Shown one piece after another: positions 20,534-58,651 of a DNA stretch of 64,000 nucleotides. The translations under genes and the position numbers were made by a program. The stretch covers positions 62,001 through 126,000 of the IMG/VR virus record IMGVR_UViG_3300024308_000016. The stretch is one strand, 5' to 3'. Position 1 is the stretch's first letter. Every line of letters starts with the position of its first letter. The notes below the pieces were generated by a model that was not told where the DNA came from, ran no database searches, and was given only the letters and a program-made list of their open reading frames with translations.

Positions 20534-20536
20534 TGT

Positions 20537-44422: not shown

Positions 44423-44785
44423 ATGTTCGAAGCAGATATAGAGTTACCCCAGGGCTTCACAGAGCAGCAAGCGGCTGCTCGCCAGATCGCTCTCCAGTAT
44501 CTGGGGGTCGTCAGCAAGGTCACCGCCAACACTGACGGAGAGATCATTGCTCCCGAGCTATTGTGTCGCCTAGAGTCCGAGCTTGCCAAGGAAGTAGCCA
44601 TGCTATCCCTGCGGTACGGTGCCCAATCCTGGATGAATGACTTCGGTCATCGGTTCCGGTTCTCCGTCACATCCAACATGGATGCCATCGTGATCGATGA
44701 GACCAGCGGTCGTCTGTTCAGTATGTACCGCGGCCACGAGAGTGTCCTCAAGCATCACCAGTTCACCCCTATAACCGAGTCCTAA
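44423..44785 (+). CDS. hypothetical protein
   Basis: TGAAAG upstream. Confidence 0.65.
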   Translation: MFEADIELPQGFTEQQAAARQIALQYLGVVSKVTANTDGEIIAPELLCRLESELAKEVAMLSLRYGAQSWMNDFGHRFRFSVTSNMDAIVIDETSGRLFSMYRGHESVLKHHQFTPITES

Positions 44786-44799
44786 GTAGAAAGCCTGTC

Positions 44800-45399
44800 A
44801 TGAATCTGGAAACCATAGCCGTATCCCGCCAGTACGTGGAAACCCAAGCACTGGAGATGATCAACAAAGCCGTCACCTCCAATAACAACAAGGATCTGAA
44901 CCTGGAGGAGTCGATCCGTCTGTTTTGGCCTTCGGTCACGCGGATGCCGTCAGCATTCATTGTTTTGAAGGACGGCGCCTTCCAGTATTGCAGCGATCAT
45001 CCTACCACCACTCGGCGCCTGATGAGCGAGGAGGGGTTCTCCGAGTACAGTGCAGGTCACGATTACTGGAACCGGGAAAACCGTCAACGCTATTTGAAGC
45101 TACTGTACTCTACGTATCCGTCGGGGACGCAGTATTTAGCGGGTGTGGGCATCGTGACGATCGATCATGACTCCAATTTCGGAATCAGTGATCACGATAT
45201 CCGCTCGATCACTGTCCAATCGCGTGTTTACACCTTCAGCGAGAAGGCCGAGATGATGGTGCCCTACAAGGCGCTGCAAACTCTGGGCACTCCGGACCCA
45301 GAAGCCTATATCCGGGAGAGGCTCAAAGAAAAGGATGAAGTCATGATCGAATCGGTGATCAATAACTATCGCCATATGCGGTGCGAGTTCGCGACATAA
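44800..45399 (+). CDS. hypothetical protein
   Basis: TAGAAAG upstream; followed by hairpin 45403-45438. Confidence 0.7.
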   Translation: MNLETIAVSRQYVETQALEMINKAVTSNNNKDLNLEESIRLFWPSVTRMPSAFIVLKDGAFQYCSDHPTTTRRLMSEEGFSEYSAGHDYWNRENRQRYLKLLYSTYPSGTQYLAGVGIVTIDHDSNFGISDHDIRSITVQSRVYTFSEKAEMMVPYKALQTLGTPDPEAYIRERLKEKDEVMIESVINNYRHMRCEFAT

Positions 45400-45443
45400 A
45401 GCTCCGCTGTCTCAGCCCCTTGTAGGGGCTGAGATGGAGGGTC

Positions 45444-45481
45444 TTTGTAGATTACTGAGGTCACTTACACTTTACTTGAGG
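45444..45481 (+). promoter_or_regulatory. phage promoter copy P5
   Basis: TTTGTAG-N8-GGTCACTTACACTTTACTTGAGG. Confidence 0.8.
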
Positions 45482-45531
45482 ATGGCGTTTACGACCGATC
45501 CATATTTTATCGTTCAAATAGAAAGCTCTAT

Positions 45532-46074
45532 ATGTCAGGCATGTACGGGAAGATGAATATATCGAGTTGGCCGAGAATGGGGATATATGCGATCATTCCG
45601 ATGGGTGATGGTCGGATGTGGTGCAAGAAGGACTATAGCGTCAGCTGTCACGACTACTCTGAGAGATACGTAGCAACGAACCACTCTGCTGGATTGCTAG
45701 CTTCAAAAGCTGTACACACAGCGGCAATATGTAAGAAGATGGTCCACTCACAGGAGATACTTCGAGACATGGTCCAGGGTTCGACTGAGGTGCTGGATAT
45801 TCCCAGAAACCGAGCAGCCTTTGATGCCGTCGGTAACCTGCAGATGTTCATCGGGCTTTATTGTGAGTTGCCCGATGGCGATGAGCCGATCTACTCGACG
45901 TTCACTACTATGAGTCGAGGAGAAGTGTACAACCCCCTGTATGGTTGCCGAAACTCCGATGTGACACTGGCGCAGTTCCATCATCAGCTCGACCTCATCA
46001 TCAAGCTTGGCTTGTTTCGGTATGTCGACCATTTGCTCAACATATACATGAACGCACGCAAACGACTGGGGTAA
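45532..46074 (+). CDS. NPxYGK-family paralog 1
   Basis: YNPLYGCRNSDVT; AATAGAAAG at 45517. Confidence 0.75.
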   Translation: MSGMYGKMNISSWPRMGIYAIIPMGDGRMWCKKDYSVSCHDYSERYVATNHSAGLLASKAVHTAAICKKMVHSQEILRDMVQGSTEVLDIPRNRAAFDAVGNLQMFIGLYCELPDGDEPIYSTFTTMSRGEVYNPLYGCRNSDVTLAQFHHQLDLIIKLGLFRYVDHLLNIYMNARKRLG

Positions 46075-46077
46075 CGG

Positions 46078-46701
46078 ATGTCAAAAGTATACGGAGAAGT
46101 GGATCTGGCTGACGGGATCATGACAATAGGAGAGGAGACGGATGCGGGAGCTCAGATCTATCTGACCCACAAGCCAACGTATCGCTTTGAACAAGTCAAC
46201 GAGTATGACAGCCAGCATCACGACAATTCTAAGAGAGACGTCGAGAAAAGCGTCTGGACCGACAACAACGATGTTGAGGATAGTGTCTCTGTGACGCTGT
46301 CTGCATCAGTGGACCGCATGGTCAAAGCTTTGAAGAGTGGCACGCACATGCTGCTGTTTCAGGCCAGTGGCTGGGAGTTGATGAATCTGGTCAAGGAACC
46401 CGACTGGGCGTGGCCGGACGATGTGTTCTCAGTTATCCCTAGGCGTGATATGGGAGAATTCATTAACGCTCGCCGTCAGCTGTACCTGAGCCTGGAGGCT
46501 AGCGAGGTATACAGACTCGCTGAGATGATCACGTTTCGGGGTATGGACATCGACGACTATAGTCCAATCTTCGGCAAGAAGTACTATGCTGTCGATCTCG
46601 ATGAGTACGTAGGGTTATTGCGCCAAGCCCAGAGCCGGGGCATATGGTGGCTGCAAGACTACGTTAGACACAAACTAAGACAGGGACGCAAAAATGAGTA
46701 A
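46078..46701 (+). CDS. NPxYGK-family paralog 2
   Basis: Starts MSKVYGE; YSPIFGKKYYAVDLDEY. Confidence 0.75.
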   Translation: MSKVYGEVDLADGIMTIGEETDAGAQIYLTHKPTYRFEQVNEYDSQHHDNSKRDVEKSVWTDNNDVEDSVSVTLSASVDRMVKALKSGTHMLLFQASGWELMNLVKEPDWAWPDDVFSVIPRRDMGEFINARRQLYLSLEASEVYRLAEMITFRGMDIDDYSPIFGKKYYAVDLDEYVGLLRQAQSRGIWWLQDYVRHKLRQGRKNE

Positions 46702-47275
46702 GCGATACGGAGAGATCAACTACAACAATGGTGATTATGGATTCTACACGAACCGACCTGTATGCGACTTCAAGGAGATCAATGCCCGAGAAGATATGTA
46801 CGGTGATAGCGGCCGCAGTAGACGCAATATAAAAGGAATAGCTACGTTCAGGGGATCTGTCGTCACACTGACTGCATCAATCGACATGATGGTCAAGGCA
46901 CTTAAGACTCCTGCGTATATGGGAATGATCGGCATGAGCTCCTGGGAGCTTGTGGCTGCTTCCTCCGTGGACAGGGGTTGGTTCAGCGATGACGACCCGA
47001 TGGCATGCATCCCCTCTGAGGACATCCGCCGCTACAATGACGCGATCGACTGGTTTACCTCGTGTCTGCGGGGGGTGTGTTGGCCAGTTATCATACCGCT
47101 GCTGACGTTCGAGGATCTCGACCGCAATGAGCACAATCCCCTGTTTGGCAAACGGATCTTCGAGATCACGCACGTCGAGTACATCGCTCTGTTGCGTCAG
47201 ATCCAAGCCAAAGGTCCTTACTGGCTCAATGACCATGTCAGGGCCACTCTAAGAAAGGCAAGAAAAAGTGAGTAA
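46694..47275 (+). CDS. NPxYGK-family paralog 3
   Basis: Starts MSKRYGE; HNPLFGKRIFEITHVEY. Confidence 0.75.
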   Translation: MSKRYGEINYNNGDYGFYTNRPVCDFKEINAREDMYGDSGRSRRNIKGIATFRGSVVTLTASIDMMVKALKTPAYMGMIGMSSWELVAASSVDRGWFSDDDPMACIPSEDIRRYNDAIDWFTSCLRGVCWPVIIPLLTFEDLDRNEHNPLFGKRIFEITHVEYIALLRQIQAKGPYWLNDHVRATLRKARKSE

Positions 47276-47822
47276 GCGATATGGAGAAGTGGAGCACGGA
47301 GTCATACGAAGTGGGGCATGCGAGGACATAACGCATATGCGTATCAAAAGAAATATTCGTGTGCTCCAAAATCGACGTAAGGAAGGTGCTCATAAGACGC
47401 GCCTACGCTCAGAAGAAAGTCACCTGCAGTACGAGGGCACCATCTACTGTCATATCTCCCGGCTAATTAAGTTACTGGCTACTGACCTTGACTTCAAGAT
47501 CGCTATGCAGGGAAATGCACTCGAAGAAGGTGACTTTCGAGCAGCTGACTATTCGAATGAACGCATGTCTGCTATCGAAGAAACTGCTGAAGAGATATAC
47601 ACGCACATATACGCCTTTAGCTATTTTTATGCTTTTGATTTATATGCGCGCCTGGCTCTCCTGTATGCTGACACAATGGATTATAATCCGATATTCCAAA
47701 AGCGCAATTGCGAGATTACTCGATTGGAATATATCGCGTTTTTAAAGCAATTGCAAAGGGAGGGTATTCAGTCATATATTAACCGGGCAATTAAACTGAT
47801 AATGAATTCGAGAAAGGGGTAG
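47268..47822 (+). CDS. NPxYGK-family paralog 4
   Basis: GTG start, SKRYGE; YNPIFQKRNCEITRLEY. Confidence 0.75.
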   Translation: MSKRYGEVEHGVIRSGACEDITHMRIKRNIRVLQNRRKEGAHKTRLRSEESHLQYEGTIYCHISRLIKLLATDLDFKIAMQGNALEEGDFRAADYSNERMSAIEETAEEIYTHIYAFSYFYAFDLYARLALLYADTMDYNPIFQKRNCEITRLEYIAFLKQLQREGIQSYINRAIKLIMNSRKG

Positions 47823-47826
47823 GTTT

Positions 47827-48255
47827 ATGGGACTTATGTTTTCTGATCTGCCAGACCATCCGAATGACATCTCCTTAAAAACCGATCGGCGACTGTCTCG
47901 CTTATTTTGGCGTCTGTGCAATATCCTCGACACCGAGCAAGCGTTTGCACGCTATGTACGATACTGGGGCCATAAGAACAGCGGGCTTTACCGGATAGCA
48001 AGTCAGTTCTATGACCCATGCTACCTGACTGGGAACTGGATAACTAACGCCATGACTGTATCCGGCGCTGATGCCAGAGTAGTCAACTCTGTCTTGATGC
48101 GCGATAACCGAGGCGGTATTAATCCGCTATACGGTCGCAACTCCCGTCTGGTGACTCGCCAGATGCACCATACGCTGATGCTGGACCTGGCCAAGCTCAG
48201 TGACGGGGAGATCATCCGAGAGCTCACTAGGCGAGTTTTAGGGAGCACACCATGA
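47827..48255 (+). CDS. NPxYGK-family paralog 5
   Basis: INPLYGRNSRLVT. Confidence 0.7.
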   Translation: MGLMFSDLPDHPNDISLKTDRRLSRLFWRLCNILDTEQAFARYVRYWGHKNSGLYRIASQFYDPCYLTGNWITNAMTVSGADARVVNSVLMRDNRGGINPLYGRNSRLVTRQMHHTLMLDLAKLSDGEIIRELTRRVLGSTP

Positions 48256-48752
48256 GTGGACGTGGAGCAAGGATCGCATTACTGGAGTACGATGATGACG
48301 CACATGGCTTTACGCGCCGTCGTTATGACTACCTGACGCTGGAGCGCACGCTCGATCGGCTGCTGAGCAAGCCCGAGGCTGTGAAGTTCATGCTCAACAG
48401 TGCTCTTCTCAAAATCGGGGAGTATCGGGATAGGTCTCTTTCCTGGGACCAGATCACTCGCCCTGATCAATCTTTGGCCATCAAGGGCTATCGGGAAAAG
48501 CAGCGAGCGGTCTATTCTGACATGGACCGATTATGTCGCATATTCAACGATATAGTCGGTTATAATAAGGCCGGGTATTGGATTTTAGGAGTATTGAATT
48601 CCAAAGATTTTAATCCTTATTACGGAAAGGCAAATATATCAGTAAAACCAATTGAAATAATCGAAGAGTTACAGTTAATGCGCTCAATAGGTGGTAAAGC
48701 CTCTATTAACCGTATTCGAGCAAATCCCGCTATCGTTAGTTTATTCAAGTAA
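48252..48752 (+). CDS. NPxYGK-family paralog 6
   Basis: FNPYYGKANISVKPIE. Confidence 0.7.
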   Translation: MSGRGARIALLEYDDDAHGFTRRRYDYLTLERTLDRLLSKPEAVKFMLNSALLKIGEYRDRSLSWDQITRPDQSLAIKGYREKQRAVYSDMDRLCRIFNDIVGYNKAGYWILGVLNSKDFNPYYGKANISVKPIEIIEELQLMRSIGGKASINRIRANPAIVSLFK

Positions 48753-48767
48753 GAAAGCTTTATTGTC

Positions 48768-49139
48768 ATGACAGAACAAATCTCCTCTCCCCTGGACAAC
48801 TTCCACGCTGAGCTCAACAAGCTCAAGAGCAGTGTGGGTTCCTCCAAAGACCACCCCATCCGCAACCTGTCAGCCAAAACCGCTGACCCCAGCTTGTCTC
48901 AGCACTACCGCCAGATGGCTGCTGTGGTGCGTACGGGCACTGCCGCCGAGGTGCTGCCTGGCGTATGCCTGGCACTGATGGCGGTGAAGATGGACGATAT
49001 CCCCGTCAATCCCATCTACGGCAAGGTCACCGCACTGATCACTCACACGGAGGTGCTCGCCAAGATCGATGAGTTCCTGCGCTCCACCCCCAAACAGCTC
49101 AATGCCAAGTACGGCAAAGACCTCACCATCAAGGCGTAA
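48768..49139 (+). CDS. NPxYGK-family paralog 7
   Basis: VNPIYGKVTALITHTE; higher GC than paralogs 1-6. Confidence 0.7.
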   Translation: MTEQISSPLDNFHAELNKLKSSVGSSKDHPIRNLSAKTADPSLSQHYRQMAAVVRTGTAAEVLPGVCLALMAVKMDDIPVNPIYGKVTALITHTEVLAKIDEFLRSTPKQLNAKYGKDLTIKA

Positions 49140-49145
49140 TTCATC

Positions 49146-49757
49146 ATGACTCACTATTACAAACTGGCCGATCTCCAGGAGATCGCCAAGCACAATGCAG
49201 GGGGTTACTTCACTGGCGAGTGTGTCCAAGTCTGGACGGGTCTGAGTGTGATGTTGTCGGGCTATCCAGAGGTGCAGTCTCTGTCTACGGAAAACGGGCT
49301 GCTCGTGCGTCCCAAAGGTCGGACTGCTTACCGCATCATGGTGCTGAACGTTCGCTACTACGCCGATGGCGAATGGCACACCAAGGAGATCCGTTACAAC
49401 CGCTACCGTCCCATCGACGGAGGCTTTCCAGCCAGTGGGGAAGATACCGTCGTGCCGCTGCGGATACTGGACTACCTGCAAGGCCAGGGCGTGGGAAAGC
49501 CCGGTGAGTACGATGAGCTCAGGTTGTTCTTCAAGCGATTCATGGGCCGGGAGTACAGACTGGGGGACTTCCGTGCTCTGATGGAAGTATGGTGGGGCTG
49601 CAAGTACTTCGACCACCACTACTGGGCGATCGATGGCAGCAGCTACTCCTTTCACCGGGATCGTCATGTCCGCATGATGCAGATGGCCAAGACCAATCCC
49701 GTTGCCAAGGAGATGATGCTGCACCACAAAGTACCCATCACGGAGGAACGCAAGTGA
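49146..49757 (+). CDS. hypothetical protein
   Basis: 203 aa; operon continuity. Confidence 0.7.
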   Translation: MTHYYKLADLQEIAKHNAGGYFTGECVQVWTGLSVMLSGYPEVQSLSTENGLLVRPKGRTAYRIMVLNVRYYADGEWHTKEIRYNRYRPIDGGFPASGEDTVVPLRILDYLQGQGVGKPGEYDELRLFFKRFMGREYRLGDFRALMEVWWGCKYFDHHYWAIDGSSYSFHRDRHVRMMQMAKTNPVAKEMMLHHKVPITEERK

Positions 49758-50005
49758 AAGATGTGCTCCTAAAGCGTATGAGCCTGCGGGCTGCTGCTAA
49801 TGCGGTTCTCATCGCGTACGACCCCGAGTCTGATGCGCCAGATGCTCCCATCCAGGGAGTATCCCGGCAGCTCGACCGCAAGATCAAGGAAGCATTCGGG
49901 GAGACGCCTCAAGTAGAGGCTGACCCACTGCCTCCGCCTATCCGACCCAAGCGCGGAATCCCGTTGTCGGGACGAGAGCCTTGGTATCACAGCTACCGTC
50001 GATAG
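49754..50005 (+). CDS. small hypothetical protein
   Basis: GTGA coupling; GGAGG upstream. Confidence 0.6.
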   Translation: MKDVLLKRMSLRAAANAVLIAYDPESDAPDAPIQGVSRQLDRKIKEAFGETPQVEADPLPPPIRPKRGIPLSGREPWYHSYRR

Positions 50006-50034
50006 TTGTGTCATAAGCCAGACAAAGCACATCC

Positions 50035-50070
50035 CCTACACTCCCAGACCGCGAGGTCTGGGAGTGTAGG
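50035..50070 (+). terminator. long hairpin
   Basis: CCTACACTCCCAGACC-GCGA-GGTCTGGGAGTGTAGG, perfect 16 bp stem. Confidence 0.65.
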
Positions 50071-50162
50071 TTTGGATTGGATGCGTAGGTAAGCGTGTTT
50101 CCACACGCCCACCCCGCCAGTGACCACTGGCTAAAGTTGCTTGTACTTTATTTTTTGTCCCC

Positions 50163-50200
50163 TTTGTGGAAGTTTTCAGTCACATATACTCTACTTGAGG
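50163..50200 (+). promoter_or_regulatory. phage promoter copy P6
   Basis: TTTGTGG-N8-AGTCACATATACTCTACTTGAGG. Confidence 0.75.
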
Positions 50201-50242
50201 CACACCGCTTCAATATCTTTGTTCGCTAACTGAAAGACTCAA

Positions 50243-50851
50243 ATGACCAGCAAGCCCCTGAACATCGCAGCTGCCCAGATTCCTGCCCCTGATACGACTC
50301 CCACTCGTTCGCGCTTTAACTTCCCGCGGGTGGCCGAGGACGCCCGCTACGATGACCGCGACTACTGTGGCCGTGACCATGAACGTGAAGAGCGTACCCG
50401 TGAACGCGAAGACCTGGCCCGTGAACGTGACCTCGAACGCGCTGACCGCGATCGTGAACGCGCAGACCGTGCTCGTGCTCGTGACGACCGCCGCCGCGAA
50501 CGTGACTACGGCCGCTCCAGCGACGCCTATCGCTGTGCCCGCATCTCGGCACCCAGTCGCCATACGCCCGTGCTCAACGGCGTAGACTTGAGTATCGCTG
50601 AGCAGCGCTTCCTCAACGATCGCGTCCAGGCCATGAGCGAAGAGATCCTGGACCTGATGGCCTATGCCGAGAACACCCGTGAGCGCATTGCCCGTGAGCA
50701 GCGTCTGCTGGCTGATCGTCTGGTTGAGATCAAGGAGTTGACTGTGCTTCGTGACGCCGGACTGGAGCGCCTGAGCGCGATGCTGACCAAGCCGGCTCCC
50801 GCTCCTGCTCCTGCTGCTCCGCTTGAAGTCCCGACGTCCGATACACCTTGA
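50243..50851 (+). CDS. R/D/E mixed-charge low-complexity and coiled-coil protein
   Basis: RDHEREERTREREDLARERDLERADRDRER segment, then a helical region and a PAPAPA tail. Confidence 0.75.
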   Translation: MTSKPLNIAAAQIPAPDTTPTRSRFNFPRVAEDARYDDRDYCGRDHEREERTREREDLARERDLERADRDRERADRARARDDRRRERDYGRSSDAYRCARISAPSRHTPVLNGVDLSIAEQRFLNDRVQAMSEEILDLMAYAENTRERIAREQRLLADRLVEIKELTVLRDAGLERLSAMLTKPAPAPAPAAPLEVPTSDTP

Positions 50852-50891
50852 TAGTGGCCGATATCCGATGGCCTAGTACAAAGGAGTAGTT

Positions 50892-51089
50892 ATGCCATCG
50901 ACTTCGAAGAAGCAAGAGAACTTCATGCGGGCTGTGGCCCACAACAAGGAGTTCGCTGACAAAGTGGGAGTTGACCAAAAGGTCGGCGAAGACTTTGAAG
51001 CCGCCGATAAGGCGCAATCGCCCCAAAAGCGGGCAGCCAAGCCTGAAAAGGCCAAGAGCTCCAACGAGAGCTTCCTCAAACGCTGGTGA
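50892..51089 (+). CDS. small conserved phage protein
   Basis: AAGGAG upstream; MPSTSKKQENFMRAVAHNKEFADKVGV matches a widespread phage family of unknown function. Confidence 0.7.
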   Translation: MPSTSKKQENFMRAVAHNKEFADKVGVDQKVGEDFEAADKAQSPQKRAAKPEKAKSSNESFLKRW

Positions 51090-51170
51090 TCCCAGCTCCC
51101 TCATCTCCGGCAGCCTTCGGGCTGTCGGAGGTATTGTTTTTTGTCGTCCTCTAATAGAAAGTCCCTGATC

Positions 51171-51422
51171 ATGTCCGCTGCTGACAACAAGACCTCCATC
51201 TCCAAGATCGAACCCAACACCTACACGCTGTACTGGCTCGACGGCGTGCGCGAAGTGATCCGCGGCGATGACATCGCCCAGGCCTTCGTGAATGCAGGCT
51301 ATGGCGACGGCTCCCTGCGCGCTGTGGATATGTGGCGCTGGGGCAATGATACCGAATATGTCTGGGACAAGGCCAAGCGCGTCTGGGTGCGTGACATCAA
51401 CTCCTTGGTGGGTGCCGAATGA
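51171..51422 (+). CDS. small conserved phage protein
   Basis: AATAGAAAG at 51153; YTLYWLDG..AQAF..AGYG.G motif. Confidence 0.7.
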   Translation: MSAADNKTSISKIEPNTYTLYWLDGVREVIRGDDIAQAFVNAGYGDGSLRAVDMWRWGNDTEYVWDKAKRVWVRDINSLVGAE

Positions 51423-51697
51423 TGGAACGCAAGACAGCCAAGCAAATGCGCGAAGAACTTCACCAGCTGGAGGACTTTTACTCAGACGCATTCTTCACCG
51501 TGATGTCGGTGATTTTTCTCGGATTCATCGCCTTCATGGGGGCGATGATCTGGTTCGGTATCCAAGAAGTCCAGGAAAAAGGCATGCGCTCTGGACTTCT
51601 GGTAGTGTTCGTCCTTGGTCCGATCACGATCAGCGCATGCCTGAAAGCTTTATGGGACCATTGGCGCGTGGTCTTCCGTCGTCTCTTTACCCGTTAA
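51419..51697 (+). CDS. small two-TM membrane protein
   Basis: ATGA coupling; two hydrophobic helices. Confidence 0.7.
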   Translation: MMERKTAKQMREELHQLEDFYSDAFFTVMSVIFLGFIAFMGAMIWFGIQEVQEKGMRSGLLVVFVLGPITISACLKALWDHWRVVFRRLFTR

Positions 51698-51730
51698 CTT
51701 CTCATCTCTATATAGAAAGGTCTATCCACC

Positions 51731-52948
51731 ATGGTCAATCCCGCTACCGCCATCCCCCGCAGCCAATGGAAGTTCCCCATCGGTCCTGATCGCGACACGA
51801 ATGCGTTCTTCTTGTTTCACTCTGTGCGGTCCGTGACTGCCGACGAGAACCGCGCCGCAGAAGTGGTGCTGCTCGACGCGCTGGTGCAGCACGCTAAAAA
51901 TGAGCTCAAGGAGGCTGAGGCCGTCGCTACTTTGCGCATCATCCAGACCTACGGCACCACGGAGCTGTGGGCGGGCGAGTCCGTCCGCAGCCTGGTGCTC
52001 CTCGTGCGGGAATACATGGACGCCAAAGTAAATGCTGCGCCTGCGAACTCCGAGTTCGACCGATACAAAACGCGGGTCATCGCCATGGCGCGCATCAAGA
52101 GCCCTCAGGACGTCCTGCATGAGATGCGCAAGTGGAGTGCTCGCCACATCGCGGTCGCCAGTGTAACGATCCAGCATCTGAAGGTGGTACGTGACGCCTT
52201 TTGCCTGACGGTGGGATTTTCCCAGTACCTGGAGGCGTTCAACGAGGAGATGGAGCGCATCTGCAAAGACGCCGGCATCGTCAACCGCGCTCCGGCCCTG
52301 TTCAAGACCGAGGACAAGGAGTTCCACGCGAGCTACAAGAATATCGATCACCTCTTGACGGTCGACTTCCTGACTAAGGTGCCCCTGGTTCTGCAAAAGC
52401 TCAGCCATTCTACCGATCCCCAGTTCTCGGACATCATGGTGCTGGTCGATTCGTTCAAGCGCACGATAGGCTACCAGGAGCTGCAAGGCAGTCTGCTGCC
52501 CCTGATCATCGGGCACGTCGATTACCTCAAGAGTCAGGGCGCCTGGATCGACAATGACCGTGGCGTGCCTGGCCCTCCTGTGGAAATCCCTGAACGCCTG
52601 GCCAAACAGCTGTACGCGTTCAACGAAGCGCTGGTCACCAAAAAGCCAGCCTGGGCGCTGAGTGTGTTTCGGATCATCAGCAAGTCCATCGCTGAGCAGC
52701 CGGCAGATGTTCAGGCGGCTGCGTTCACCAAGCTCAAGGCTCTGAGTGTGGACTTCCCCACGTTCACACGCCTGAACCTGGCTATGGCGCGCCGTCGCGC
52801 TACAGGTGAGCTCTTCAAGGCCATCGACACCATGAGTCGCACGCTGGGCCTGGATCCTCACCTGAGTGATGCTGAGGCCGGTATGGGGCTGGATCGGGAG
52901 ATCGAAGCGACTGTGGAGTTCATCATCGAGACCTTCAACCGCCGTTGA
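51731..52948 (+). CDS. hypothetical helical protein
   Basis: 405 aa; TAGAAAGG upstream. Confidence 0.8.
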   Translation: MVNPATAIPRSQWKFPIGPDRDTNAFFLFHSVRSVTADENRAAEVVLLDALVQHAKNELKEAEAVATLRIIQTYGTTELWAGESVRSLVLLVREYMDAKVNAAPANSEFDRYKTRVIAMARIKSPQDVLHEMRKWSARHIAVASVTIQHLKVVRDAFCLTVGFSQYLEAFNEEMERICKDAGIVNRAPALFKTEDKEFHASYKNIDHLLTVDFLTKVPLVLQKLSHSTDPQFSDIMVLVDSFKRTIGYQELQGSLLPLIIGHVDYLKSQGAWIDNDRGVPGPPVEIPERLAKQLYAFNEALVTKKPAWALSVFRIISKSIAEQPADVQAAAFTKLKALSVDFPTFTRLNLAMARRRATGELFKAIDTMSRTLGLDPHLSDAEAGMGLDREIEATVEFIIETFNRR

Positions 52949-53010
52949 TCGGCTTCATGCCTGGGGCACCTGCTCCAGGCACTTCCCAACCCTCTAATAG
53001 AAAGTTCGAT

Positions 53011-54048
53011 ATGTCCAAAGACCGCAAGACCGCCATCAGTGAGATGATCGCTCGCTTCGATCTCTATAAGACCGAGGCGGGGATTATCCCTGTCCATCTG
53101 TCGCTGTTGATCATCTCCACGGCCTCGATACGTGGGCAGCTGCGCCGTTGGGTCGACAGCCAAGAGCCCTCCCAGGCTTTCCTGGCTGCCGTCGAAGCAT
53201 TCAAGGTCGAAGCCAACAATCTGAGCGACGGCTTTCGCAAAATCGTCGAGACGGCTATCTCAGCTCGGGCTAATCCCTCGGTTGATTCCCTGGAATACCT
53301 GCAGCGGGACCTGCAGGCTTTGGCCTCGGATGTCTATCACTTCAAGTGGACGATCCCTCACCTGCTGATCACGGCTTTGGGGATCAACTACACCGTGCTT
53401 GAGTCTGTGACTCAGGTCAGCAATGACATCAACTGCTGTGTGCGGGCGATCGAGACTGAAGGTGTGACAGGGTGCTCGTTCATGGAGGACGCTAGCTTCG
53501 GTGCTAAGCGTCTGAGCCAAGAGCGCGAAAAGCTGCGTATCATCATCTCTGGCATCATCGACCACCTCAATCGCTACCTGACCAACAAGTCCGAGGGCTA
53601 CAGCGGCACTCCCAGGCAGCGTACGGACGCACTGCTCGCCCGTATCCATCAGCTGCCGACGGAGCAAGGCAAGTTCGTCAAGGAGTACCTTCGATGGGCA
53701 GCTACGGGCTTTCACACGTTCCATGGAAGGATCGAAGATGTATTGCGGGCTCTGAACCCAGGCCGTGAGCACTATCGCCAGGACTTCACTGCGTTGACGG
53801 GAATAACCACCCAGCAGCTGGGGTTGCTGAAGGAGCGTTACAGCCAAAGGGAAAAGGCTGCCGATGAGCTCGAAGCCTTCAGCCAGTTGGGTGGAGTGCG
53901 GGCTCCTGGTCTGACGGGCATTGAAGCTCGCTACTGGCGCGATCAGATCAACCAGCTCAGTGCACTCATCCAGGCCCAGGTGTCTGACTCTTTGCTGTGG
54001 GCTCAAAGCCAGCCCATGTACCAGGGATTGGATCCGACCGCTCTGTAG
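53011..54048 (+). CDS. hypothetical helical protein
   Basis: AATAGAAAG at 52996. Confidence 0.75.
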   Translation: MSKDRKTAISEMIARFDLYKTEAGIIPVHLSLLIISTASIRGQLRRWVDSQEPSQAFLAAVEAFKVEANNLSDGFRKIVETAISARANPSVDSLEYLQRDLQALASDVYHFKWTIPHLLITALGINYTVLESVTQVSNDINCCVRAIETEGVTGCSFMEDASFGAKRLSQEREKLRIIISGIIDHLNRYLTNKSEGYSGTPRQRTDALLARIHQLPTEQGKFVKEYLRWAATGFHTFHGRIEDVLRALNPGREHYRQDFTALTGITTQQLGLLKERYSQREKAADELEAFSQLGGVRAPGLTGIEARYWRDQINQLSALIQAQVSDSLLWAQSQPMYQGLDPTAL

Positions 54049-54051
54049 ACC

Positions 54052-54394
54052 GAAGGTGTAAACTAAAGATACACTTTTGTATATAGAGTGGCGGTGATAG
54101 CACCTGACCAAAAGACCCGGGCACCCGAAAGGGAGCTCGGGCCCCCACTCCCAGCAGCACTCGAAGAACACTCCGAACACTCCAGCTCACTCCAGTCACT
54201 CCAATCCTAGCGTAGCTTTACTCTGTAAAGCGAAGCTCTGATTAGCTAGAGCAGGGAACCATGCTCTAGCAACTGTGGTGTGCTCGCTAGTGAGCGTAGA
54301 TCTCAAGAGTACACACTACAGCCTGAGGATCAACTTTGAGCTGTAATAGCTGATGAGCAAAGGACTCAACCTACAACACAAGGAACTCGTACCC
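54052..54394. ncRNA. candidate structured non-coding RNA or leader with six CACTC(C/G) repeats
   Basis: No convincing ORF; consecutive hairpins, one with a GAAA tetraloop; repeats at 54146, 54158, 54169, 54178, 54188, 54197. Confidence 0.45.
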
Positions 54395-54508
54395 ATGACT
54401 CGTATCCTGCAGATCGCCGATGCGATCTTCTCCCCTATCTGCCTGATCATCGTAGCTGGCGCTGGCTTGGCCATGTGCTACGCTTTGGGACAGCTCATGC
54501 GTTTGTAA
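54395..54508 (+). CDS. 37-aa single-TM peptide (below the ORF-track cutoff)
   Basis: AAGGA upstream; MTRILQIADAIFSPICLIIVAGAGLAMCYALGQLMRL; followed by two hairpins. Confidence 0.6.
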   Translation: MTRILQIADAIFSPICLIIVAGAGLAMCYALGQLMRL

Positions 54509-54629
54509 GCGCCTAGGCCATCGACTTGCCGTATACACTACGGCAGTACCTCCACCACAGTCCCCTACTAAGAGGGGACTGTGGTGGGTGTATGTTGTGT
54601 ACTTAAATAGAAAGGTAAGGTAGAGTGTT

Positions 54630-54899
54630 ATGCAGGCAATTATAATCGCTGTATGTGCGGCGGTGGGACTTATGGTCTCTGTGGGGTGTGCGTTTATGCC
54701 CGCTTACAGCAAAGCTGCTGGTCTGATGATCGATGGCAAGATAAGCCACGAGCAGTTCGATCGGGTGATACTGAAGTACAAAGTACTGTACTCTGCGCTG
54801 GGCTGGCCTGTATATACAGGTGTGGTGGGTTCATTGGTGCTGGCTTTTCTGTATATCGCTGACTTGTTTGATCAAGTCGGTATGTTGATTGGAGGATAA
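54630..54899 (+). CDS. small two-TM membrane protein
   Basis: AATAGAAAG at 54606; two hydrophobic helices. Confidence 0.65.
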   Translation: MQAIIIAVCAAVGLMVSVGCAFMPAYSKAAGLMIDGKISHEQFDRVILKYKVLYSALGWPVYTGVVGSLVLAFLYIADLFDQVGMLIGG

Positions 54900-54903
54900 G
54901 AAA

Positions 54904-55182
54904 ATGGCTGTACATGTGTTTTGGGTGCTTATAAGCATCGTAGGCGCTATAGTGGCAGTGATGGGTGTATGGATGGGGTATATGCAGGCTGGGCACTATC
55001 GGCGTGACCTGAGCCTGCAGTACGGTCACTGGCACGTATTGAGCCGTGAGCAAGAGCGCAGGGCTTTGTGGATATGGATCAAAGGCACTATCGGCGGGGG
55101 CGTGGTGATAGCGTTGATGGCTGCGGTGACTCTGTGGCCTATACTGCTGACTGAATATAACCGCATGGTAACTGGGGGATAA
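54904..55182 (+). CDS. small two-TM membrane protein
   Basis: GGAGG upstream; two hydrophobic helices. Confidence 0.65.
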   Translation: MAVHVFWVLISIVGAIVAVMGVWMGYMQAGHYRRDLSLQYGHWHVLSREQERRALWIWIKGTIGGGVVIALMAAVTLWPILLTEYNRMVTGG

Positions 55183-55186
55183 GAAG

Positions 55187-55474
55187 ATGACTGATTACGA
55201 CAAGGCGATAGTATTGGTGGTGATGTGGTGCACGGGAGTGACGGTGCTCGCCTTCATGATAGCCTATATGGTCAATGGCTCGGCGTATGTGGAGCGCTGC
55301 AAACGTCGCGATGGCGGGGGCTACTTCTACGAGATGCATGAGCGCGACCAGCCGGGCAAGCTGCTGTACTGCGCCAAGTGGGTGCCGGTATGGTGGGTGG
55401 CGATCGCTGTCATCTACATCGGTCTGTTTGCCAGTGAGGCGATGTTTGTATACCGGACACTGACCGCTGGATAA
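55187..55474 (+). CDS. small two-TM membrane protein
   Basis: Two hydrophobic helices flanking a loop with two Cys. Confidence 0.65.
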   Translation: MTDYDKAIVLVVMWCTGVTVLAFMIAYMVNGSAYVERCKRRDGGGYFYEMHERDQPGKLLYCAKWVPVWWVAIAVIYIGLFASEAMFVYRTLTAG

Positions 55475-55513
55475 AGGCAGCTAGACAAGCTCCTCCTAAA
55501 TAGAAAGGACTAA

Positions 55514-55939
55514 GTGTATATGGTATCGGTCTATGTGCCGCTCTCAGTGGAGCGTAATGATCGCACATGTATGCATGTGCAGATACTGGAGCATGACTGC
55601 AAAAGCGAGAAGCTTATCGGTCTGACCGTACAGGAGAAGGGCCCAGTGGCAGGGAGATGGTTCAAACTTCCCACTACTGGACGGATGTACAGGTTCAATG
55701 AGGAAGATCGGGAAACATACATGGGTCAGAAACTCATGTTCCGCTCTCCCATGACGTGCTCGACTGAAGGAGGCTTTTGCACAGTGTGCACAGGCGCTCC
55801 TATGGGCGTGATCGAGAGATCGGTCGAGCCCAACCGCTGGGACCAGCGCTACAGTAGCATACGGCAAGAACGCCTGCAGATGCTCGAATCCAACCGCAAA
55901 TTCAAACGTGTAATCAAGAAAGACAGGAAACAATCATGA
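55514..55939 (+). CDS. stand-alone RNA polymerase beta-prime zinc-binding domain homolog
   Basis: EHDC...GR...RSPMTCSTEGGFCTVCTG reproduces the beta-prime DC...RS.x.C-x6-C-x2-C.G Zn site; AATAGAAAG at 55499. Confidence 0.65.
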   Translation: MYMVSVYVPLSVERNDRTCMHVQILEHDCKSEKLIGLTVQEKGPVAGRWFKLPTTGRMYRFNEEDRETYMGQKLMFRSPMTCSTEGGFCTVCTGAPMGVIERSVEPNRWDQRYSSIRQERLQMLESNRKFKRVIKKDRKQS

Positions 55940-56487
55940 AGAAGATCCATCGCACCATCGCTCAACTGCAAGCATCGGCCATCTTGCGTGGCCTCAAATA
56001 CCGGGACCGTAAGCGTCAAGCGCCGGTATACCGTGATGAGCACGGCAAGCGCTTCATACCGCAGAAGATCGTCTCGCCTGCGTTCATCAACAAGCAAGAC
56101 AACGCGTGGAACCAGATGCGTGATATGGCCAAGCATGCCAGTATCTACCAGCTCGCCCGCATGTTCCGCTACCTGTATAATAGCGACCGGAGCATGATGG
56201 CCTTGTGCAGCTACACGCCGGATCCGGAGACTGCGTATTGCTATCACCGCAAGGGCGCACTGATGCGGGTTCCGGGCAAGAGCGTGCTGGACAGCGTGTT
56301 CTTTTCCAACTGCAAGGATGCCATGGCCATTGCAATGCTGGGTACGGGCTGGTACGACAAGGTACAAATGCTGCGCCGAGAGAACTGGGAGAGCTATGAC
56401 ATACTAGTCACAGATGACTCTCCTGATGTCGACTGGTCCGAGATCAGCGTAAAGAAGGCCGCTATCGCGGCTCAAGAGCAGGCATAA
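55936..56487 (+). CDS. hypothetical protein
   Basis: ATGA coupling; followed by hairpin and T tract 56494-56540. Confidence 0.7.
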   Translation: MKKIHRTIAQLQASAILRGLKYRDRKRQAPVYRDEHGKRFIPQKIVSPAFINKQDNAWNQMRDMAKHASIYQLARMFRYLYNSDRSMMALCSYTPDPETAYCYHRKGALMRVPGKSVLDSVFFSNCKDAMAIAMLGTGWYDKVQMLRRENWESYDILVTDDSPDVDWSEISVKKAAIAAQEQA

Positions 56488-56593
56488 CTGACCCTCCCAG
56501 ACCCTCACGGGTCTGGGAGTGGTGTACCTTCTTTTTTTGTCTGCAATAGGATATACAAAAACAAACACACAACTTTATAGATTGTGCGGGGCC

Positions 56594-56631
56594 TTTGTAA
56601 CGCGCCATGGTCACTTAAACCTTACTTGAGG
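56594..56631 (+). promoter_or_regulatory. phage promoter copy P7, heading the nvRNAP gp68/PicA operon
   Basis: TTTGTAA-N8-GGTCACTTAAACCTTACTTGAGG. Confidence 0.75.
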
Positions 56632-56648
56632 AAAGACCCTCGGTTTAA

Positions 56649-57098
56649 ATGAAAGCTGTTATGAACCGCAACAAGATTTCGGAAGTTGAAGTGACTGTTT
56701 TGACCCAGTTGTTGACAACTGCCATGCAAGACGCCATCGATAACACGACGTCCATGGGGTATGCCCATCTTCGCTGTGTGGAGGAAGACATCGAGAAAGC
56801 GTGGGTGCGCCGCCAGGCATTTGCTATCGATGTGTTTCGCAAGATGCGGCAAGCCGAGGGTTTGAGCGCAACCATCGAGATTGCGCAAGACAACATCTCC
56901 GGCGTTCGCATCAACGTCTTGGAGACGGAAAGCGGGGAGTTCTACTATGAGGTCGTCTATCTTCTCGACGGAGCTAAGAACGTCCTCAAGCCTCCTTCGT
57001 ATTGGGAGATGAACGAGACGGTGAATATGGCGGACTTGCTGCATGACGCCCAACTCGACATCCAGCAAAGAGCAAGCAACGAGAAAGGAAAGACATGA
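56649..57098 (+). CDS. hypothetical protein
   Basis: First ORF after P7; ATGA-coupled to the next gene. Confidence 0.7.
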   Translation: MKAVMNRNKISEVEVTVLTQLLTTAMQDAIDNTTSMGYAHLRCVEEDIEKAWVRRQAFAIDVFRKMRQAEGLSATIEIAQDNISGVRINVLETESGEFYYEVVYLLDGAKNVLKPPSYWEMNETVNMADLLHDAQLDIQQRASNEKGKT

Positions 57099-58651
57099 AG
57101 ATTGAGTCGGATTCTGGCACTATCTTGAGCCAGGATAAAAGTGTGCGTATCTCGCACACCGAGGATGGCGTCAAGCGTGGGGTGACTTTTCCGATCACCC
57201 TGTACAAGCAAGACTACTTCAAAAGCGACGAGACGTTCTCCAGCATCAACAGCTATTGGGCCCAGCTGCCCCAGGCTGACCAAGATGAGATCTTCCGGAT
57301 CTACGAGAACATCCGTGAGCTGTTTGACTCGGTCAATGGGATCAAGGAGCTCAATGACGAACTGAAGGTGTATGTGGCCAACCTCATGGCTTTCCACAGC
57401 GCCCCAGATGTCGAGCGATGGATCCGCACTACCTCTGGGCTGGAAGTGCCCAAGAGCGTGCAGCAAGAGTACAGCTTTGACGTGGACAAGAACACGACGC
57501 GGGACCAGACCTACATCTACTCCGACTACCTGGGGTTGATGAGCCTGTCGGTGATCCTGCGTGCGATGATCCCGATCTGGGCCGTCTACAACAAGACCAT
57601 ACGCAGTGACAGCGGCAAGTCCTCCAAGGACACGCACTCGTTCCAATTGCTGGAGAAGTCCAGCATCTACAAGTGCGAGCCTATGGAGCGGCTGCGCCGG
57701 TATATCCAGGCCAACCTCAATAAGAGCTCCCACACCGGCAACCACACGCTGGAGTTGCTGTGCTCGGACGACATGCCCGAGATCAACCTGGCGCTGGTAT
57801 GCGTGAGAAAGCTGTGCCTGGGAGAGCTCAGGGTCGATGATCCCAAGCAAAACCTGGCGGCGCTGGTGTACAACTACATCGTGGACAGACCTCCTCCACA
57901 GGGCCAGGACTTCTCCAAGCGCGTGCTGGAGAAGAAGATCCCCACTGAAGGTGGCGGGGAATCCGGGGAAAACAATGGATCGACCCTGGAACTGTACAAG
58001 GCCCGTTCGACCGTCACCGTCGGTCGGATCGCCGAAATGGAGTACGCGTGGAAGGATCCCCACAACCTGGCCAGGTATCTGTGCCCTGAATACGTACCCA
58101 GTCATCTGGATCGAGCACTGGAGACGACCCAAGAGCTGTACACGCATACCGTGCATCCGTGCATGTTGACGCTGGCTCAGTGGGTACTGGCTCCGGTATT
58201 CCCACCGATGGGTCTGTTCTATATGGACACCAACCTGATCCTGCGGGCATTCGCAGTGACCGAGACCGTGTTGCGCGGACGAGGTTTCAAGTCTTTGGCT
58301 CTGCTGTCGTCGGCGTATTCGCTCGATGACGAGGACGAAGGCATGCGAGTGACACCTGTGGGCTCCAAGAGCCATATCGGAGCAGAGATTCAGGAGCGGA
58401 TGCTGGGACCCTTCCCCTACGCCCGTGAACAAAGAAAGCGCACGGCTACTCCTGTGCGCACCTGCTTTGTCACGGAAGACATCAAGGACTTGTCGTCGAA
58501 GTTCTTGGAGCACACCTGGCGCGCTACTGCAGACATCGAGTTGGTCACTGAGGTGCTGCGCACCTCCAGCGTTCGACGGATCCCCATCCCTCCGAACTTG
58601 AGAAGTGAACTGGCTCTGATGCTGCTGGACGCTGAAGAGCGGTTCGAGTAA
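57095..58651 (+). CDS. non-virion RNA polymerase specificity subunit (phiKZ gp68-like)
   Basis: 518 aa; INSYWAQLP..QDEIF.IY, TY..SDY.GL..LS..LRAMIPIW and QW.L..VFPP patterns; synteny. Confidence 0.7.
   Translation: MKIESDSGTILSQDKSVRISHTEDGVKRGVTFPITLYKQDYFKSDETFSSINSYWAQLPQADQDEIFRIYENIRELFDSVNGIKELNDELKVYVANLMAFHSAPDVERWIRTTSGLEVPKSVQQEYSFDVDKNTTRDQTYIYSDYLGLMSLSVILRAMIPIWAVYNKTIRSDSGKSSKDTHSFQLLEKSSIYKCEPMERLRRYIQANLNKSSHTGNHTLELLCSDDMPEINLALVCVRKLCLGELRVDDPKQNLAALVYNYIVDRPPPQGQDFSKRVLEKKIPTEGGGESGENNGSTLELYKARSTVTVGRIAEMEYAWKDPHNLARYLCPEYVPSHLDRALETTQELYTHTVHPCMLTLAQWVLAPVFPPMGLFYMDTNLILRAFAVTETVLRGRGFKSLALLSSAYSLDDEDEGMRVTPVGSKSHIGAEIQERMLGPFPYAREQRKRTATPVRTCFVTEDIKDLSSKFLEHTWRATADIELVTEVLRTSSVRRIPIPPNLRSELALMLLDAEERFE

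What the first reader, a model, noticed from the sequence alone, without database searches (positions are those of the whole stretch)
55514..55939. Free-standing RNA polymerase beta-prime zinc-binding domain
The 141-aa protein has EHDC, GR and RSPMTCSTEGGFCTVCTG. The four cysteines match the E. coli beta-prime site (C814, C888, C895, C898; DDC...RSVVSCDTDFGVCAHCYG) with identical C-x6-C-x2-C spacing, but no catalytic regions are present. It has its own AATAGAAAG site and coupled neighbour, so it looks expressed, and lies 1.2 kb before the gp68-like subunit. Inference: an RNAP mimic or decoy, assembly factor or inhibitor. With the capsid-like minis, it hints at a strategy of expressing fragments of essential proteins.
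Basis: partly seen in the sequence, partly recalled or inferred. Interest (0 to 1): 0.7.

Follow-up and report, generated by a model that had tools for sequence, protein, structure and literature searches.

The report
Extra, non-catalytic RNA polymerase beta-prime piece
A giant phage that already has two complete RNA polymerases also carries a small, fast-evolving, conserved gene copied from the last third of one polymerase subunit; it keeps the zinc-holding module but has lost the catalytic parts, so it most likely acts on a polymerase by mimicry, which is untested.

Summary
Window 55520 (or GTG 55514)..55939 (+) encodes a 139/141-aa protein whose residues ~20-97 are the beta-prime "second zinc site" module. 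All four cysteines are present, and the profile, fold and MSA-free model matches all point to beta-prime.

- **What it is:** the C-terminal third of a phiKZ gp80-type virion-RNAP beta-prime C subunit. The bridge helix and the trigger-loop Met/His motif are lost.
- **Copy number:** it is a third copy. The same 272-kb phiKZ-like genome has intact gp80-like (450 aa) and gp74-like (679 aa) subunits, each with its own zinc site. Five GenBank jumbo phages checked have only two.
- **Not a decaying fragment:** a syntenic ortholog (132 aa, 37% identity) keeps the frame, the cysteines and the upstream AATAGAAAG motif in a sister phage whose gp68-like protein is 89% identical. Synonymous sites are saturated.
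- **Rate and range:** it evolves about 9 times faster than the neighbouring core genes. It was not found next to the gp68-like gene in more distant relatives.
- **Boundary:** in Staphylococcus phage LY01 the same piece is a naturally separate ORF of a split beta-prime gene.

Function is inferred only. The most likely role is a non-catalytic mimic that competes at an RNAP assembly or docking surface. Decoy, nucleic-acid-binding and relic readings remain open.

The parts
55499..55507 (+). AATAGAAAG gene-start motif (class-specific promoter/leader element) just upstream of the mini gene
   Evidence: The window has 16 exact copies and 24 within one mismatch, against 7 expected. The genome has 34 copies on the + strand and none on the - strand. 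32 of the 34 lie in the first 118 kb, and 33 of the 34 lie 2-15 nt before a start codon opening an ORF of 43 aa or more, mostly ATG. The motif is conserved directly upstream of the ortholog in L008 (5764-5772).
55520..55939 (+). Mini-beta-prime gene, 139 aa (141 aa if GTG 55514 is used). It is an extra copy of the C-terminal third of a gp80-type virion-RNAP beta-prime C subunit.
   Evidence: ORF. PHROG 2962/3015 hits. The identical protein is called on five contigs read. Ortholog P0002 at E 2e-21. hhalign to phiKZ gp80 residues 317-407.
55577..55810 (+). Zinc module (residues ~20-97), equivalent to E. coli beta-prime 806-913. Cys codons lie at 55598-55600, 55757-55759, 55778-55780 and 55787-55789.
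   Evidence: AF2 with MSA gives pLDDT of about 90 over this stretch. VIA-align gives Z 9.3, rmsd 2.3 A over 80 residues to E. coli beta-prime 806-913. Foldseek's top hit is phiKZ gp74 at 2.4 A over 87 columns. The MSA-free ESM Atlas model matches Rpb1_5 proteins. D26, C27, R75, C80, C87, C90 and G92 are invariant across the minis and full-length subunits aligned.
55811..55936 (+). Basic C-terminal helix (residues 98-139, pI about 10.9). It sits where the full-length subunit has its first trigger helix, but the conserved M..H motif is lost. A mini-specific P-x-N-x-W motif is present.
   Evidence: Alignments A3 and A6. Helix 104-136 is predicted at low to medium confidence. pI. PNRW/PNKW is conserved between the two minis.
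55936..56487 (+). 183-aa ORFan neighbour whose start overlaps the mini's stop (ATGA). It co-occurs with the mini in the sister phage (187 aa, 42-43% identity).
   Evidence: No Pfam or PHROG family. Absent from the relatives that lack the mini.
54551..54588 (+). Strong terminator-like hairpin (16 pairs) that closes the preceding unit. It is followed by an AATAGAAAG site (54606) and three small predicted membrane-protein genes (54630-55474) that lead up to the mini.
57095..58651 (+). gp68-like (sigma-like) subunit of the non-virion RNAP. It is the first gene of the conserved nvRNAP block and marks the right edge of the variable island that holds the mini.
   Evidence: BLASTP to phiKZ gp68 at E 8e-30. 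phrog_3209 at E 1e-92. 89% identical in L008.

Best explanation
SHOWN.
- The ORF is a real, conserved, lineage-restricted accessory gene of a phiKZ-like (Chimalliviridae-type) jumbo phage.
- It descends from the 3'-terminal third of a gp80-type virion-RNAP beta-prime C-subunit gene. Some other jumbo phages (Staphylococcus phage LY01) encode this same piece as a separate ORF.
- It keeps the four-cysteine zinc module that in every multisubunit RNAP sits between the bridge helix and the trigger loop.
- It has lost the bridge helix and the trigger-loop Met/His motif, so it cannot contribute to catalysis.
- It is a third copy beside intact gp80-like and gp74-like subunits.
- It carries its own gene-start motif and evolves about 9 times faster than the adjacent RNAP core genes while staying in frame.

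INFERRED (about 0.35). The piece can exist as a separate ORF of a split subunit gene elsewhere, and here it has kept its fold-defining residues. The most likely mechanism is therefore subunit mimicry. The mini would dock on the surface of an RNAP body or assembly intermediate that normally receives the C-terminal piece of beta-prime C. The phage's own virion-type RNAP is the most likely target; a co-infecting relative's RNAP is less likely. Lacking the trigger helix residues, the mini would act as a non-catalytic competitor or regulator. It would either inhibit the enzyme (dominant-negative) or hold an intermediate during assembly.
For: - Homology and fold.
- Collinearity with the C-terminal third, and loss of the bridge helix and the M..H motif.
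- Intact paralogs in the same genome.
- A third copy is unusual. phiKZ, FLC9, RSF1, LucasX and LY01 each have exactly two zinc-module hits. All significant BFVD structural hits are proteins of 368-758 aa.
- Selection. A syntenic ortholog at 37% identity keeps all four cysteines, and gp68-like is 89% identical. dN is 0.74 against 0.084, dS is above 1 for all genes, and NG86 omega is about 0.33.
- The motif is conserved upstream in both phages.
- The piece is a separate ORF elsewhere. In LY01, ORFs of 266 aa and 130 aa map to phrog_2962 positions 69-294 and 310-433.
Against: - No binding evidence of any kind exists.
- In this phage both resident beta-prime C subunits already carry their own covalently attached module, so a free copy has no obvious vacant site.
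- Only two lineages carry the gene, so it is dispensable for the family.
- omega of about 0.33 with saturated dS, and 63% residue change, is also what a weakly constrained hitch-hiker would show.
- The AF2 model used an MSA made mostly of full-length subunit fragments, so it leans towards that fold. This is mitigated by the MSA-free Atlas model.
- Transcription was not demonstrated.
Confidence: 0.4

Rival explanations
1. Exapted small zinc-stabilised nucleic-acid-binding protein. The beta-prime module would serve only as a stable scaffold, and the basic C-terminal helix would bind DNA or RNA (for example as a transcription or translation regulator of the early gene set), with no contact to RNAP.
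For: Both minis are basic (pI 9.1-9.5) and have a strongly basic tail (pI 10.2-10.9). The tail and the PxNxW motif are mini-specific novelties. The gene lies in an island of early-type ORFans that share one start motif.
Against: The equivalent part of full-length subunits is about as basic (pI 7.8-9.4), so charge does not discriminate. The tail is the least conserved part between the two minis. No known DNA-binding family matched.
Confidence: 0.2
2. Relic with little or no function. The ORF would be a leftover of an ectopic insertion of a split-gene or exon-like piece of a beta-prime C gene, for example carried along by homing-endonuclease or recombination traffic between co-infecting jumbo phages. 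It would be kept open only by chance, or by weak selection unrelated to RNAP.
For: - RNAP genes of relatives are visibly invaded or split. The nvRNAP beta gene is interrupted by NUMOD1-type ORFs in L012 and L014 but not in L013 or L010.
- A 103-aa zinc-module ORF sits next to an HNH gene in L009.
- LY01 has a split gp80-type gene.
- The mini profile scores higher on distant subunits (42-54 bits) than on the phage's own (19 bits), and the tree places the minis outside the own clade.
- Amino-acid divergence is very fast.
Against: - The ORF is intact, of similar length and with all four cysteines and core residues in two lineages whose synonymous sites are saturated.
- Its start motif is conserved.
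- No endonuclease gene lies beside it in either phage.
- The AU test does not reject an own-lineage origin (p = 0.113), so foreign origin is not established.
Confidence: 0.2
3. Decoy for a host immune sensor. A free copy of a surface module of the ejected virion RNAP would be made early to titrate a host defence protein that recognises ejected jumbo-phage factors.
For: - The gene is fast-evolving and lineage-restricted, and lies in a variable island between conserved blocks.
- It derives from the virion (ejected) RNAP type.
- Host systems that sense ejected phiKZ factors exist, and their trigger is unidentified (Juk; bioRxiv 10.1101/2022.09.17.508391).
- A second partial paralog, of the major head protein, exists in the same genome.
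Against: No defence system is known to sense this module. A decoy made after ejection would be late against a sensor that acts before phage protein synthesis. The idea is purely circumstantial.
Confidence: 0.1
4. Genuine alternative RNAP subunit. The mini would replace or complement the C-terminal part of a beta-prime C subunit in a subset of polymerase molecules, giving them altered properties.
For: The same piece is a separate ORF of a split subunit gene in LY01. The gene sits just upstream of the nvRNAP gene block.
Against: The resident subunits are intact, so there is no truncated partner to complement. The trigger-helix Met/His residues required for the piece's normal role are replaced.
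Confidence: 0.05

Closest known systems
phiKZ gp80 family (phrog_2962): C-terminal beta-prime-like subunit of the jumbo-phage virion RNAP
   Same: The mini is collinear with the last ~135 residues. It shares the four-cysteine zinc module, the D-C, Y-x-G and R-S-P-x-x-C motifs, and the fold. The best full-length hits in the exhaustive search are all gp80-type proteins of 424-494 aa.
   Different: It is one third of the length, has no bridge helix, and has lost the trigger-helix M..H motif. It is an extra copy beside an intact 450-aa gp80 homolog, and it evolves far faster.
The 130-aa C-terminal ORF of the split gp80-type gene of Staphylococcus phage LY01 (WRM43468.1)
   Same: It has the same size and the same N-terminal boundary (profile positions 310-433 against 309-396), and it is a separate ORF.
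   Different: In LY01 it is the only copy. It lies 358 nt downstream of the matching 266-aa N-terminal ORF and retains the MKSFH trigger-helix motif, so it is presumably an essential part of the enzyme. The window's mini has no adjacent N-terminal partner, is redundant, and has lost that motif.
Second zinc site of bacterial beta-prime (E. coli C814/C888/C895/C898; T. thermophilus C1112/C1194/C1201/C1204) and phiKZ gp74 C288/C341/C350/C353
   Same: The ligand pattern C...C-x6-C-x2-C is identical. The structures superpose on E. coli beta-prime 806-913 at 2.3 A over 80 residues. The gp74 site is described in PMC8287921. From my own recollection of Markov et al. 1999, this site is needed for beta-prime folding and assembly rather than for catalysis.
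   Different: In all of those it is an internal segment of a large catalytic subunit that ties region F to region G. Here both flanking functional elements are gone.
Small lineage-specific phage factors that handle jumbo-phage RNAP, e.g. phiKZ Imp7 (gp166, 15 kDa)
   Same: It is a small protein restricted to a narrow clade, and it is encoded by a nucleus-forming jumbo phage.
   Different: No sequence similarity was found; the tblastn search of the phage collection returned no phiKZ record. Imp7 is not an RNAP-derived fold. This is a functional analogy only.

Membership tests
RNAP beta-prime second-zinc-site module (segment between bridge helix and trigger loop) | Four cysteines arranged as C-x(n)-C-x6-C-x2-C, aligned to the family's ligands | tested here: met
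   C27, C80, C87 and C90 are invariant in the alignments with 12 and 108 beta-prime C fragments. They are conserved in ortholog P0002.
RNAP beta-prime second-zinc-site module (segment between bridge helix and trigger loop) | Significant profile match to beta-prime families | tested here: met
   phrog_2962 E 1.4e-10 and phrog_3015 E 1.4e-9. hhalign to phiKZ gp80 gives probability 82% and E 1e-5. Pfam PF04998 does not hit, but it also misses the phage's own full-length subunits, so that miss is uninformative.
RNAP beta-prime second-zinc-site module (segment between bridge helix and trigger loop) | Same three-dimensional fold | tested here: met
   Z 9.3, 2.3 A over 80 residues to E. coli beta-prime 806-913. 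The top 50 Foldseek PDB hits are all RNAP beta-prime-type chains. The MSA-free Atlas model matches Rpb1_5 clusters at TM 0.56-0.59. Caveat: the AF2 MSA is dominated by full-length fragments.
RNAP beta-prime second-zinc-site module (segment between bridge helix and trigger loop) | Actually binds Zn2+ | not testable with these tools
   Needs metal analysis of purified protein.
Functional beta-prime C subunit (gp80/gp74 type) | Bridge helix N-terminal to the zinc module | tested here: not met
   The nearly invariant bridge-helix columns (T3, G6, G7, V8, K11, L14 of A4) are absent. The mini N-terminus is unrelated and contains proline.
Functional beta-prime C subunit (gp80/gp74 type) | Trigger-helix M..H motif after the zinc module | tested here: not met
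   MKAMH-type motif columns M122 and H123 are at least 90% conserved in the family. They are replaced by L and E in the window protein and by L and T in P0002.
Split-gene C-terminal piece of a gp80-type subunit (as in phage LY01) | Separate ORF starting at the same boundary of the profile | tested here: met
   The mini covers profile positions 309-396 and the LY01 piece covers 310-433.
Split-gene C-terminal piece of a gp80-type subunit (as in phage LY01) | It is the genome's only copy of that region, with the matching N-terminal piece encoded nearby | tested here: not met
   An intact 450-aa gp80 homolog lies elsewhere in the genome (C1:134067-135419). The ORFs next to the mini are small membrane proteins and ORFans.
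Decaying gene fragment / pseudogene | Frame disrupted or lost in relatives; no excess of synonymous over non-synonymous change | tested here: not met
   The frame is open and of similar length in two lineages. dS is about 2.3 (saturated), dN is 0.74 and omega is about 0.33. The one difference from a 99%-identical strain is synonymous. Power is low because only two divergent sequences exist.

The most novel reading that the evidence does not exclude
The mini is a dominant-negative subunit mimic: a catalytically dead copy of the detachable C-terminal piece of the virion-RNAP beta-prime subunit. Made from an early-class promoter, it would insert into virion-type RNAP. If the target is the phage's own RNAP, it would shut off early transcription at the early-to-middle switch. 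If the target is a co-infecting jumbo phage whose subunit is naturally split, it would be a weapon between phages. Together with the mini major-head-protein paralog in the same genome, this would point to a wider strategy of using fragments of essential proteins as regulators or poisons.
Probability: 0.15. Interest if true: 0.75.

Novelty: new variant of a known kind. Interest (0 to 1): 0.5.

Why it matters
Jumbo-phage RNAPs are known for being split into several polypeptides, but a redundant, non-catalytic, selectively maintained copy of one piece has not been described in the papers I could search.

If it acts on RNAP, it would be a genetically simple tool, and possibly a natural regulator, for the virion RNAP, whose shut-off and assembly are not described in the papers read here. 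It would also show that the zinc module is an autonomous docking unit.

If it is a decoy or an inter-phage poison, it would add a new class of counter-measure built from fragments of essential proteins.

If it proves inert, it still documents how split-gene pieces of RNAP genes move and persist between jumbo phages.

Tried and rejected
- **Pfam on the mini and its neighbours:** no significant family.
- **Word-indexed search of 5.8 billion proteins:** only the protein itself.
- **IMG/VR scans** with the mini alignment and the gp68-like alignment: nothing beyond the own record.
- **Single-sequence AF2:** unusable, pLDDT 41.
- **dN/dS against the 99%-identical strain:** one synonymous difference only, so no power. 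YN00 failed on saturated data, so only NG86 is reported.
- **Origin of the copy:** the best tree places the minis outside the clade of the phage's own subunit. Long branches are involved and the AU test (p = 0.113) does not reject an own-lineage duplication, so I do not claim horizontal origin.
- **Complex prediction** of the mini with its 183-aa neighbour: no answer (score 0.10). This is evidence neither for nor against binding.
- **RNA-type public runs** (wastewater, chicken gut): only short scattered contigs, probably DNA in part. Transcription is not shown.
- **Rfam search for introns** around the split or fragment ORFs in LY01 and L009: none at E <= 0.01.
- **Neighbour 183 aa:** the language-model search gave only sub-threshold leads, including ADP-ribosyltransferase families at 0.81-0.83. 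I do not rely on them.
- **'Missing exon of a broken beta-prime gene':** rejected because both resident subunits are complete.
- **Homology to phiKZ Imp7:** considered and dropped, since no phiKZ record was returned by tblastn.

Full report
**Setting.** The window is bases 62,001-126,000 of a 272,393-bp viral record that CheckV rates complete. GC content is 55.9%. It is a phiKZ-like, nucleus-forming-type jumbo phage.
- The 518-aa ORF at 57095-58651 is a homolog of phiKZ gp68 (E 8e-30). Relatives of it occur in 167 jumbo-phage records.
- The genome encodes a gp80-like virion-RNAP beta-prime C subunit (450 aa, C1:134067-135419, minus strand; E 5e-38 to phiKZ gp80).
- It encodes a gp74-like non-virion beta-prime C subunit (679 aa, C1:126721-128760).
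- It encodes an nvRNAP beta subunit (729-aa frame).
- Near-identical copies of the locus occur in two Logan-assembled public sequencing runs. Coded RNA-type runs labelled wastewater and chicken-gut metagenome hold parts of the stretch.

**The observation.**
- The similarity to beta-prime is statistically solid. PHROG families 2962 and 3015, both 'RNA polymerase beta subunit' and in fact the gp80- and gp74-type beta-prime C subunits, match at E 1.4e-10 and 1.4e-9.
- An exhaustive phmmer scan of 1.84 billion representatives returns, besides one ortholog, five full-length gp80-type proteins and one 103-aa zinc-module ORF.
- The start is probably ATG 55520, giving 139 aa. This follows the ortholog alignment and the near-universal ATG use after the motif.

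**Anatomy.** Alignment with gp80-type subunits shows that the protein is collinear with their last ~135 residues.
- Residues ~20-97 are the zinc module. D26, C27, R75, C80, C87, C90 and G92 are invariant across the minis and full-length proteins in the small alignments. In the 110-row alignment the invariant columns are C27, R75, C80, C87 and C90.
- The N-terminal 20 residues replace the C-terminal half of the bridge helix and are unrelated to it.
- The C-terminal 40 residues occupy the place of the first trigger helix. The family's conserved M..H motif is replaced (L..E here, L..T in the ortholog).
- A mini-specific PxNxW motif and a basic tail have appeared.
- An AF2 model with a 110-row alignment is confident over residues 20-95. 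It superposes on E. coli beta-prime 806-913 at Z 9.3 and 2.3 A over 80 residues, and on phiKZ gp74 at 2.4 A over 87 columns.
- That MSA consists mostly of full-length fragments, so the model leans towards their fold. The ESM Atlas's own MSA-free model of this protein also lands on Rpb1-domain-5 proteins (TM 0.56-0.59).

**Is it a live gene?** An ortholog (P0002, 132 aa, 37% identity, E 2e-21) lies at the same place in a 76.7-kb contig from another sample (L008).
- The gene order there is small membrane-protein genes, the mini, an extra ORF, the homolog of the 183-aa neighbour, two small ORFs, then gp68-like.
- gp68-like is 89% identical between the two phages and the next gene is 77% identical. 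The mini is 37% identical and its neighbour 43%.
- Synonymous sites are saturated for all genes (dS 0.8-3). dN is 0.74 for the mini against 0.084 for gp68-like, and NG86 omega is about 0.33.
- An unconstrained 139-codon frame would not be expected to stay open, keep its length and keep all four cysteines over that distance. The 'decaying fragment' refutation therefore fails, although constraint is clearly weaker than on core genes.
- The AATAGAAAG motif lies 9 nt before the ortholog's ATG as well.
- Genome-wide the motif occurs 34 times on the plus strand and never on the minus strand. 32 copies are in the first 118 kb, and 33 of the 34 sit 2-15 nt before a start codon opening an ORF of 43 aa or more, mostly ATG. 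That fits a class-specific promoter or leader element rather than a generic ribosome site.
- The genes behind the motif are mostly ORFans, plus glutathionylspermidine-synthase-like and nucleotidyltransferase-like genes. That looks like an early or accessory set, but timing was not measured.

**Distribution.** The mini and its neighbour are absent from the region upstream of gp68-like in more distant relatives.
- These are L010 (gp68-like 68% identical, only 3.2 kb upstream available) and L012, L013 and L014 (52-53%, 10 kb upstream).
- No other small homolog exists among the representatives of about 15 billion proteins, apart from P0007.
- In phiKZ only two genes separate the SbcD-like gene from gp68. 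Here about 15 kb of ORFans lies between them (40796-57095). The mini therefore sits in a variable island.
- A profile of the module finds exactly two copies in each of phiKZ, FLC9, RSF1, LucasX and LY01. All significant structural matches in the viral structure library are proteins of 368-758 aa. A third, free-standing copy is therefore unusual.

**Origin.** In Staphylococcus phage LY01 the gp80-type gene is split into a 266-aa ORF (profile positions 69-294) and a 130-aa ORF (310-433), 358 nt apart.
- The mini starts at the same boundary, so the piece exists as a separate ORF elsewhere.
- The mini profile scores higher on distant gp80-type proteins (42-54 bits) than on the phage's own (19 bits).
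- The maximum-likelihood tree joins the two minis (100/98) outside the 102-row clade that contains the phage's own subunit.
- Long branches are involved, and the AU test (p = 0.113) does not reject an own-lineage duplication. Whether the piece was duplicated in place or imported remains open.
- RNAP genes in this group are visibly trafficked. NUMOD1-type ORFs interrupt the nvRNAP beta gene in L012 and L014. A 103-aa zinc-module ORF sits beside an HNH gene in L009, with no continuation of the subunit downstream.

**Mechanism.**
- What is shown: a conserved, redundant, non-catalytic copy of an RNAP module that occurs as a separate ORF elsewhere, probably expressed with an accessory gene class.
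- What is inferred: it acts by mimicry on an RNAP or an assembly intermediate, as a competitor, inhibitor or holder. I put this at about 0.35.
- The rivals are a zinc-scaffolded nucleic-acid binder (0.2), a weakly selected relic (0.2), an immune decoy (0.1) and a true alternative subunit (0.05).
- The main argument against mimicry is that both resident subunits already carry their own module, which leaves no obvious vacant site.
- The literature read here describes the gp74 zinc site (PMC8287921), the subunit sets of both enzymes (PMC7618050), assembly-dependent nuclear import helped by a small lineage-specific factor, and host sensing of ejected virion factors. None of it describes a free-standing beta-prime fragment.

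**Verdict.** The functional reading is plausible but untested. It is a new variant within the known theme of split jumbo-phage RNAP subunits. It is of moderate interest now and would be of high interest if the mimicry or poison mechanism is demonstrated.

Noticed in passing
window 7210-7803 (+): A 197-aa ORF matches residues 244-400 of the genome's 737-aa major head protein (C1:183657-185867, phrog_3231) at 27% identity over 157 aa, E 1e-8 within the genome. It is a second 'mini' paralog of an essential protein. It has no PHROG hit of its own.
   Followed up: partly
whole genome; window sites e.g. 23413, 30485, 45517, 54606, 55499: AATAGAAAG occurs 34 times on the + strand and never on the - strand. 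32 copies lie in the first 118 kb, and 33 of the 34 sit 2-15 nt before a start codon opening an ORF of 43 aa or more, mostly ATG, often just after a T-rich stretch. It is likely a class-specific promoter or leader of the accessory/early gene set.
   Followed up: partly
window ~42092-57095: About 15 kb of ORFans with no Pfam family lies between the SbcD-like gene (40796-42076) and gp68-like. In phiKZ only gp66 and gp67 sit there. This is a variable accessory island.
   Followed up: partly
window 54551-55474: A 16-pair terminator-like hairpin is followed by three tandem small (89-95 aa) hydrophobic, probably two-helix membrane proteins. L008 has five such genes at the same place, only 25-29% identical. 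Contigs from other samples differ from the window inside the hairpin (54563-54572).
   Followed up: no
L024 (Staphylococcus phage LY01, OR836606.1 130874-132431): The gp80-type virion-RNAP beta-prime C gene is split into ORFs of 266 aa and 130 aa, 358 nt apart. No Rfam intron was detected, and both ORFs are annotated only as hypothetical proteins.
   Followed up: partly
L009 58-369 and 811-1479: A 103-aa zinc-module ORF matches the gp74-type profile best (82 bits). An AT-rich gap and an HNH endonuclease gene follow it, and the next ORF is a virion structural protein, not the rest of the subunit. It may be another free-standing fragment, but the contig ends 57 nt upstream.
   Followed up: partly
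L012 15303-19191; L014 15303-19221: The nvRNAP beta gene of two relatives is broken into two ORFs by an inserted ORF with a faint NUMOD1 (homing-endonuclease-type) hit. L013 and L010 have an intact 710-713-aa gene.
   Followed up: no
ESM Atlas (no coordinates): A cluster of 1,408 viral proteins with a 138-aa representative shares the mini's fold (TM 0.56-0.57 both ways). It could hold split-gene pieces, truncated gene calls or more free-standing copies. The sequences were not retrievable here.
   Followed up: no
window 1778-21535 (- strand): A large family of paralogous 250-660-aa proteins lies on the minus strand (many pairwise hits at 25-34% identity).
   Followed up: no
window 55936-56487 (+): The 183-aa neighbour is an ORFan. 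The only leads are sub-threshold language-model similarities that include ADP-ribosyltransferase families (scores 0.81-0.83), which are not reliable.
   Followed up: partly
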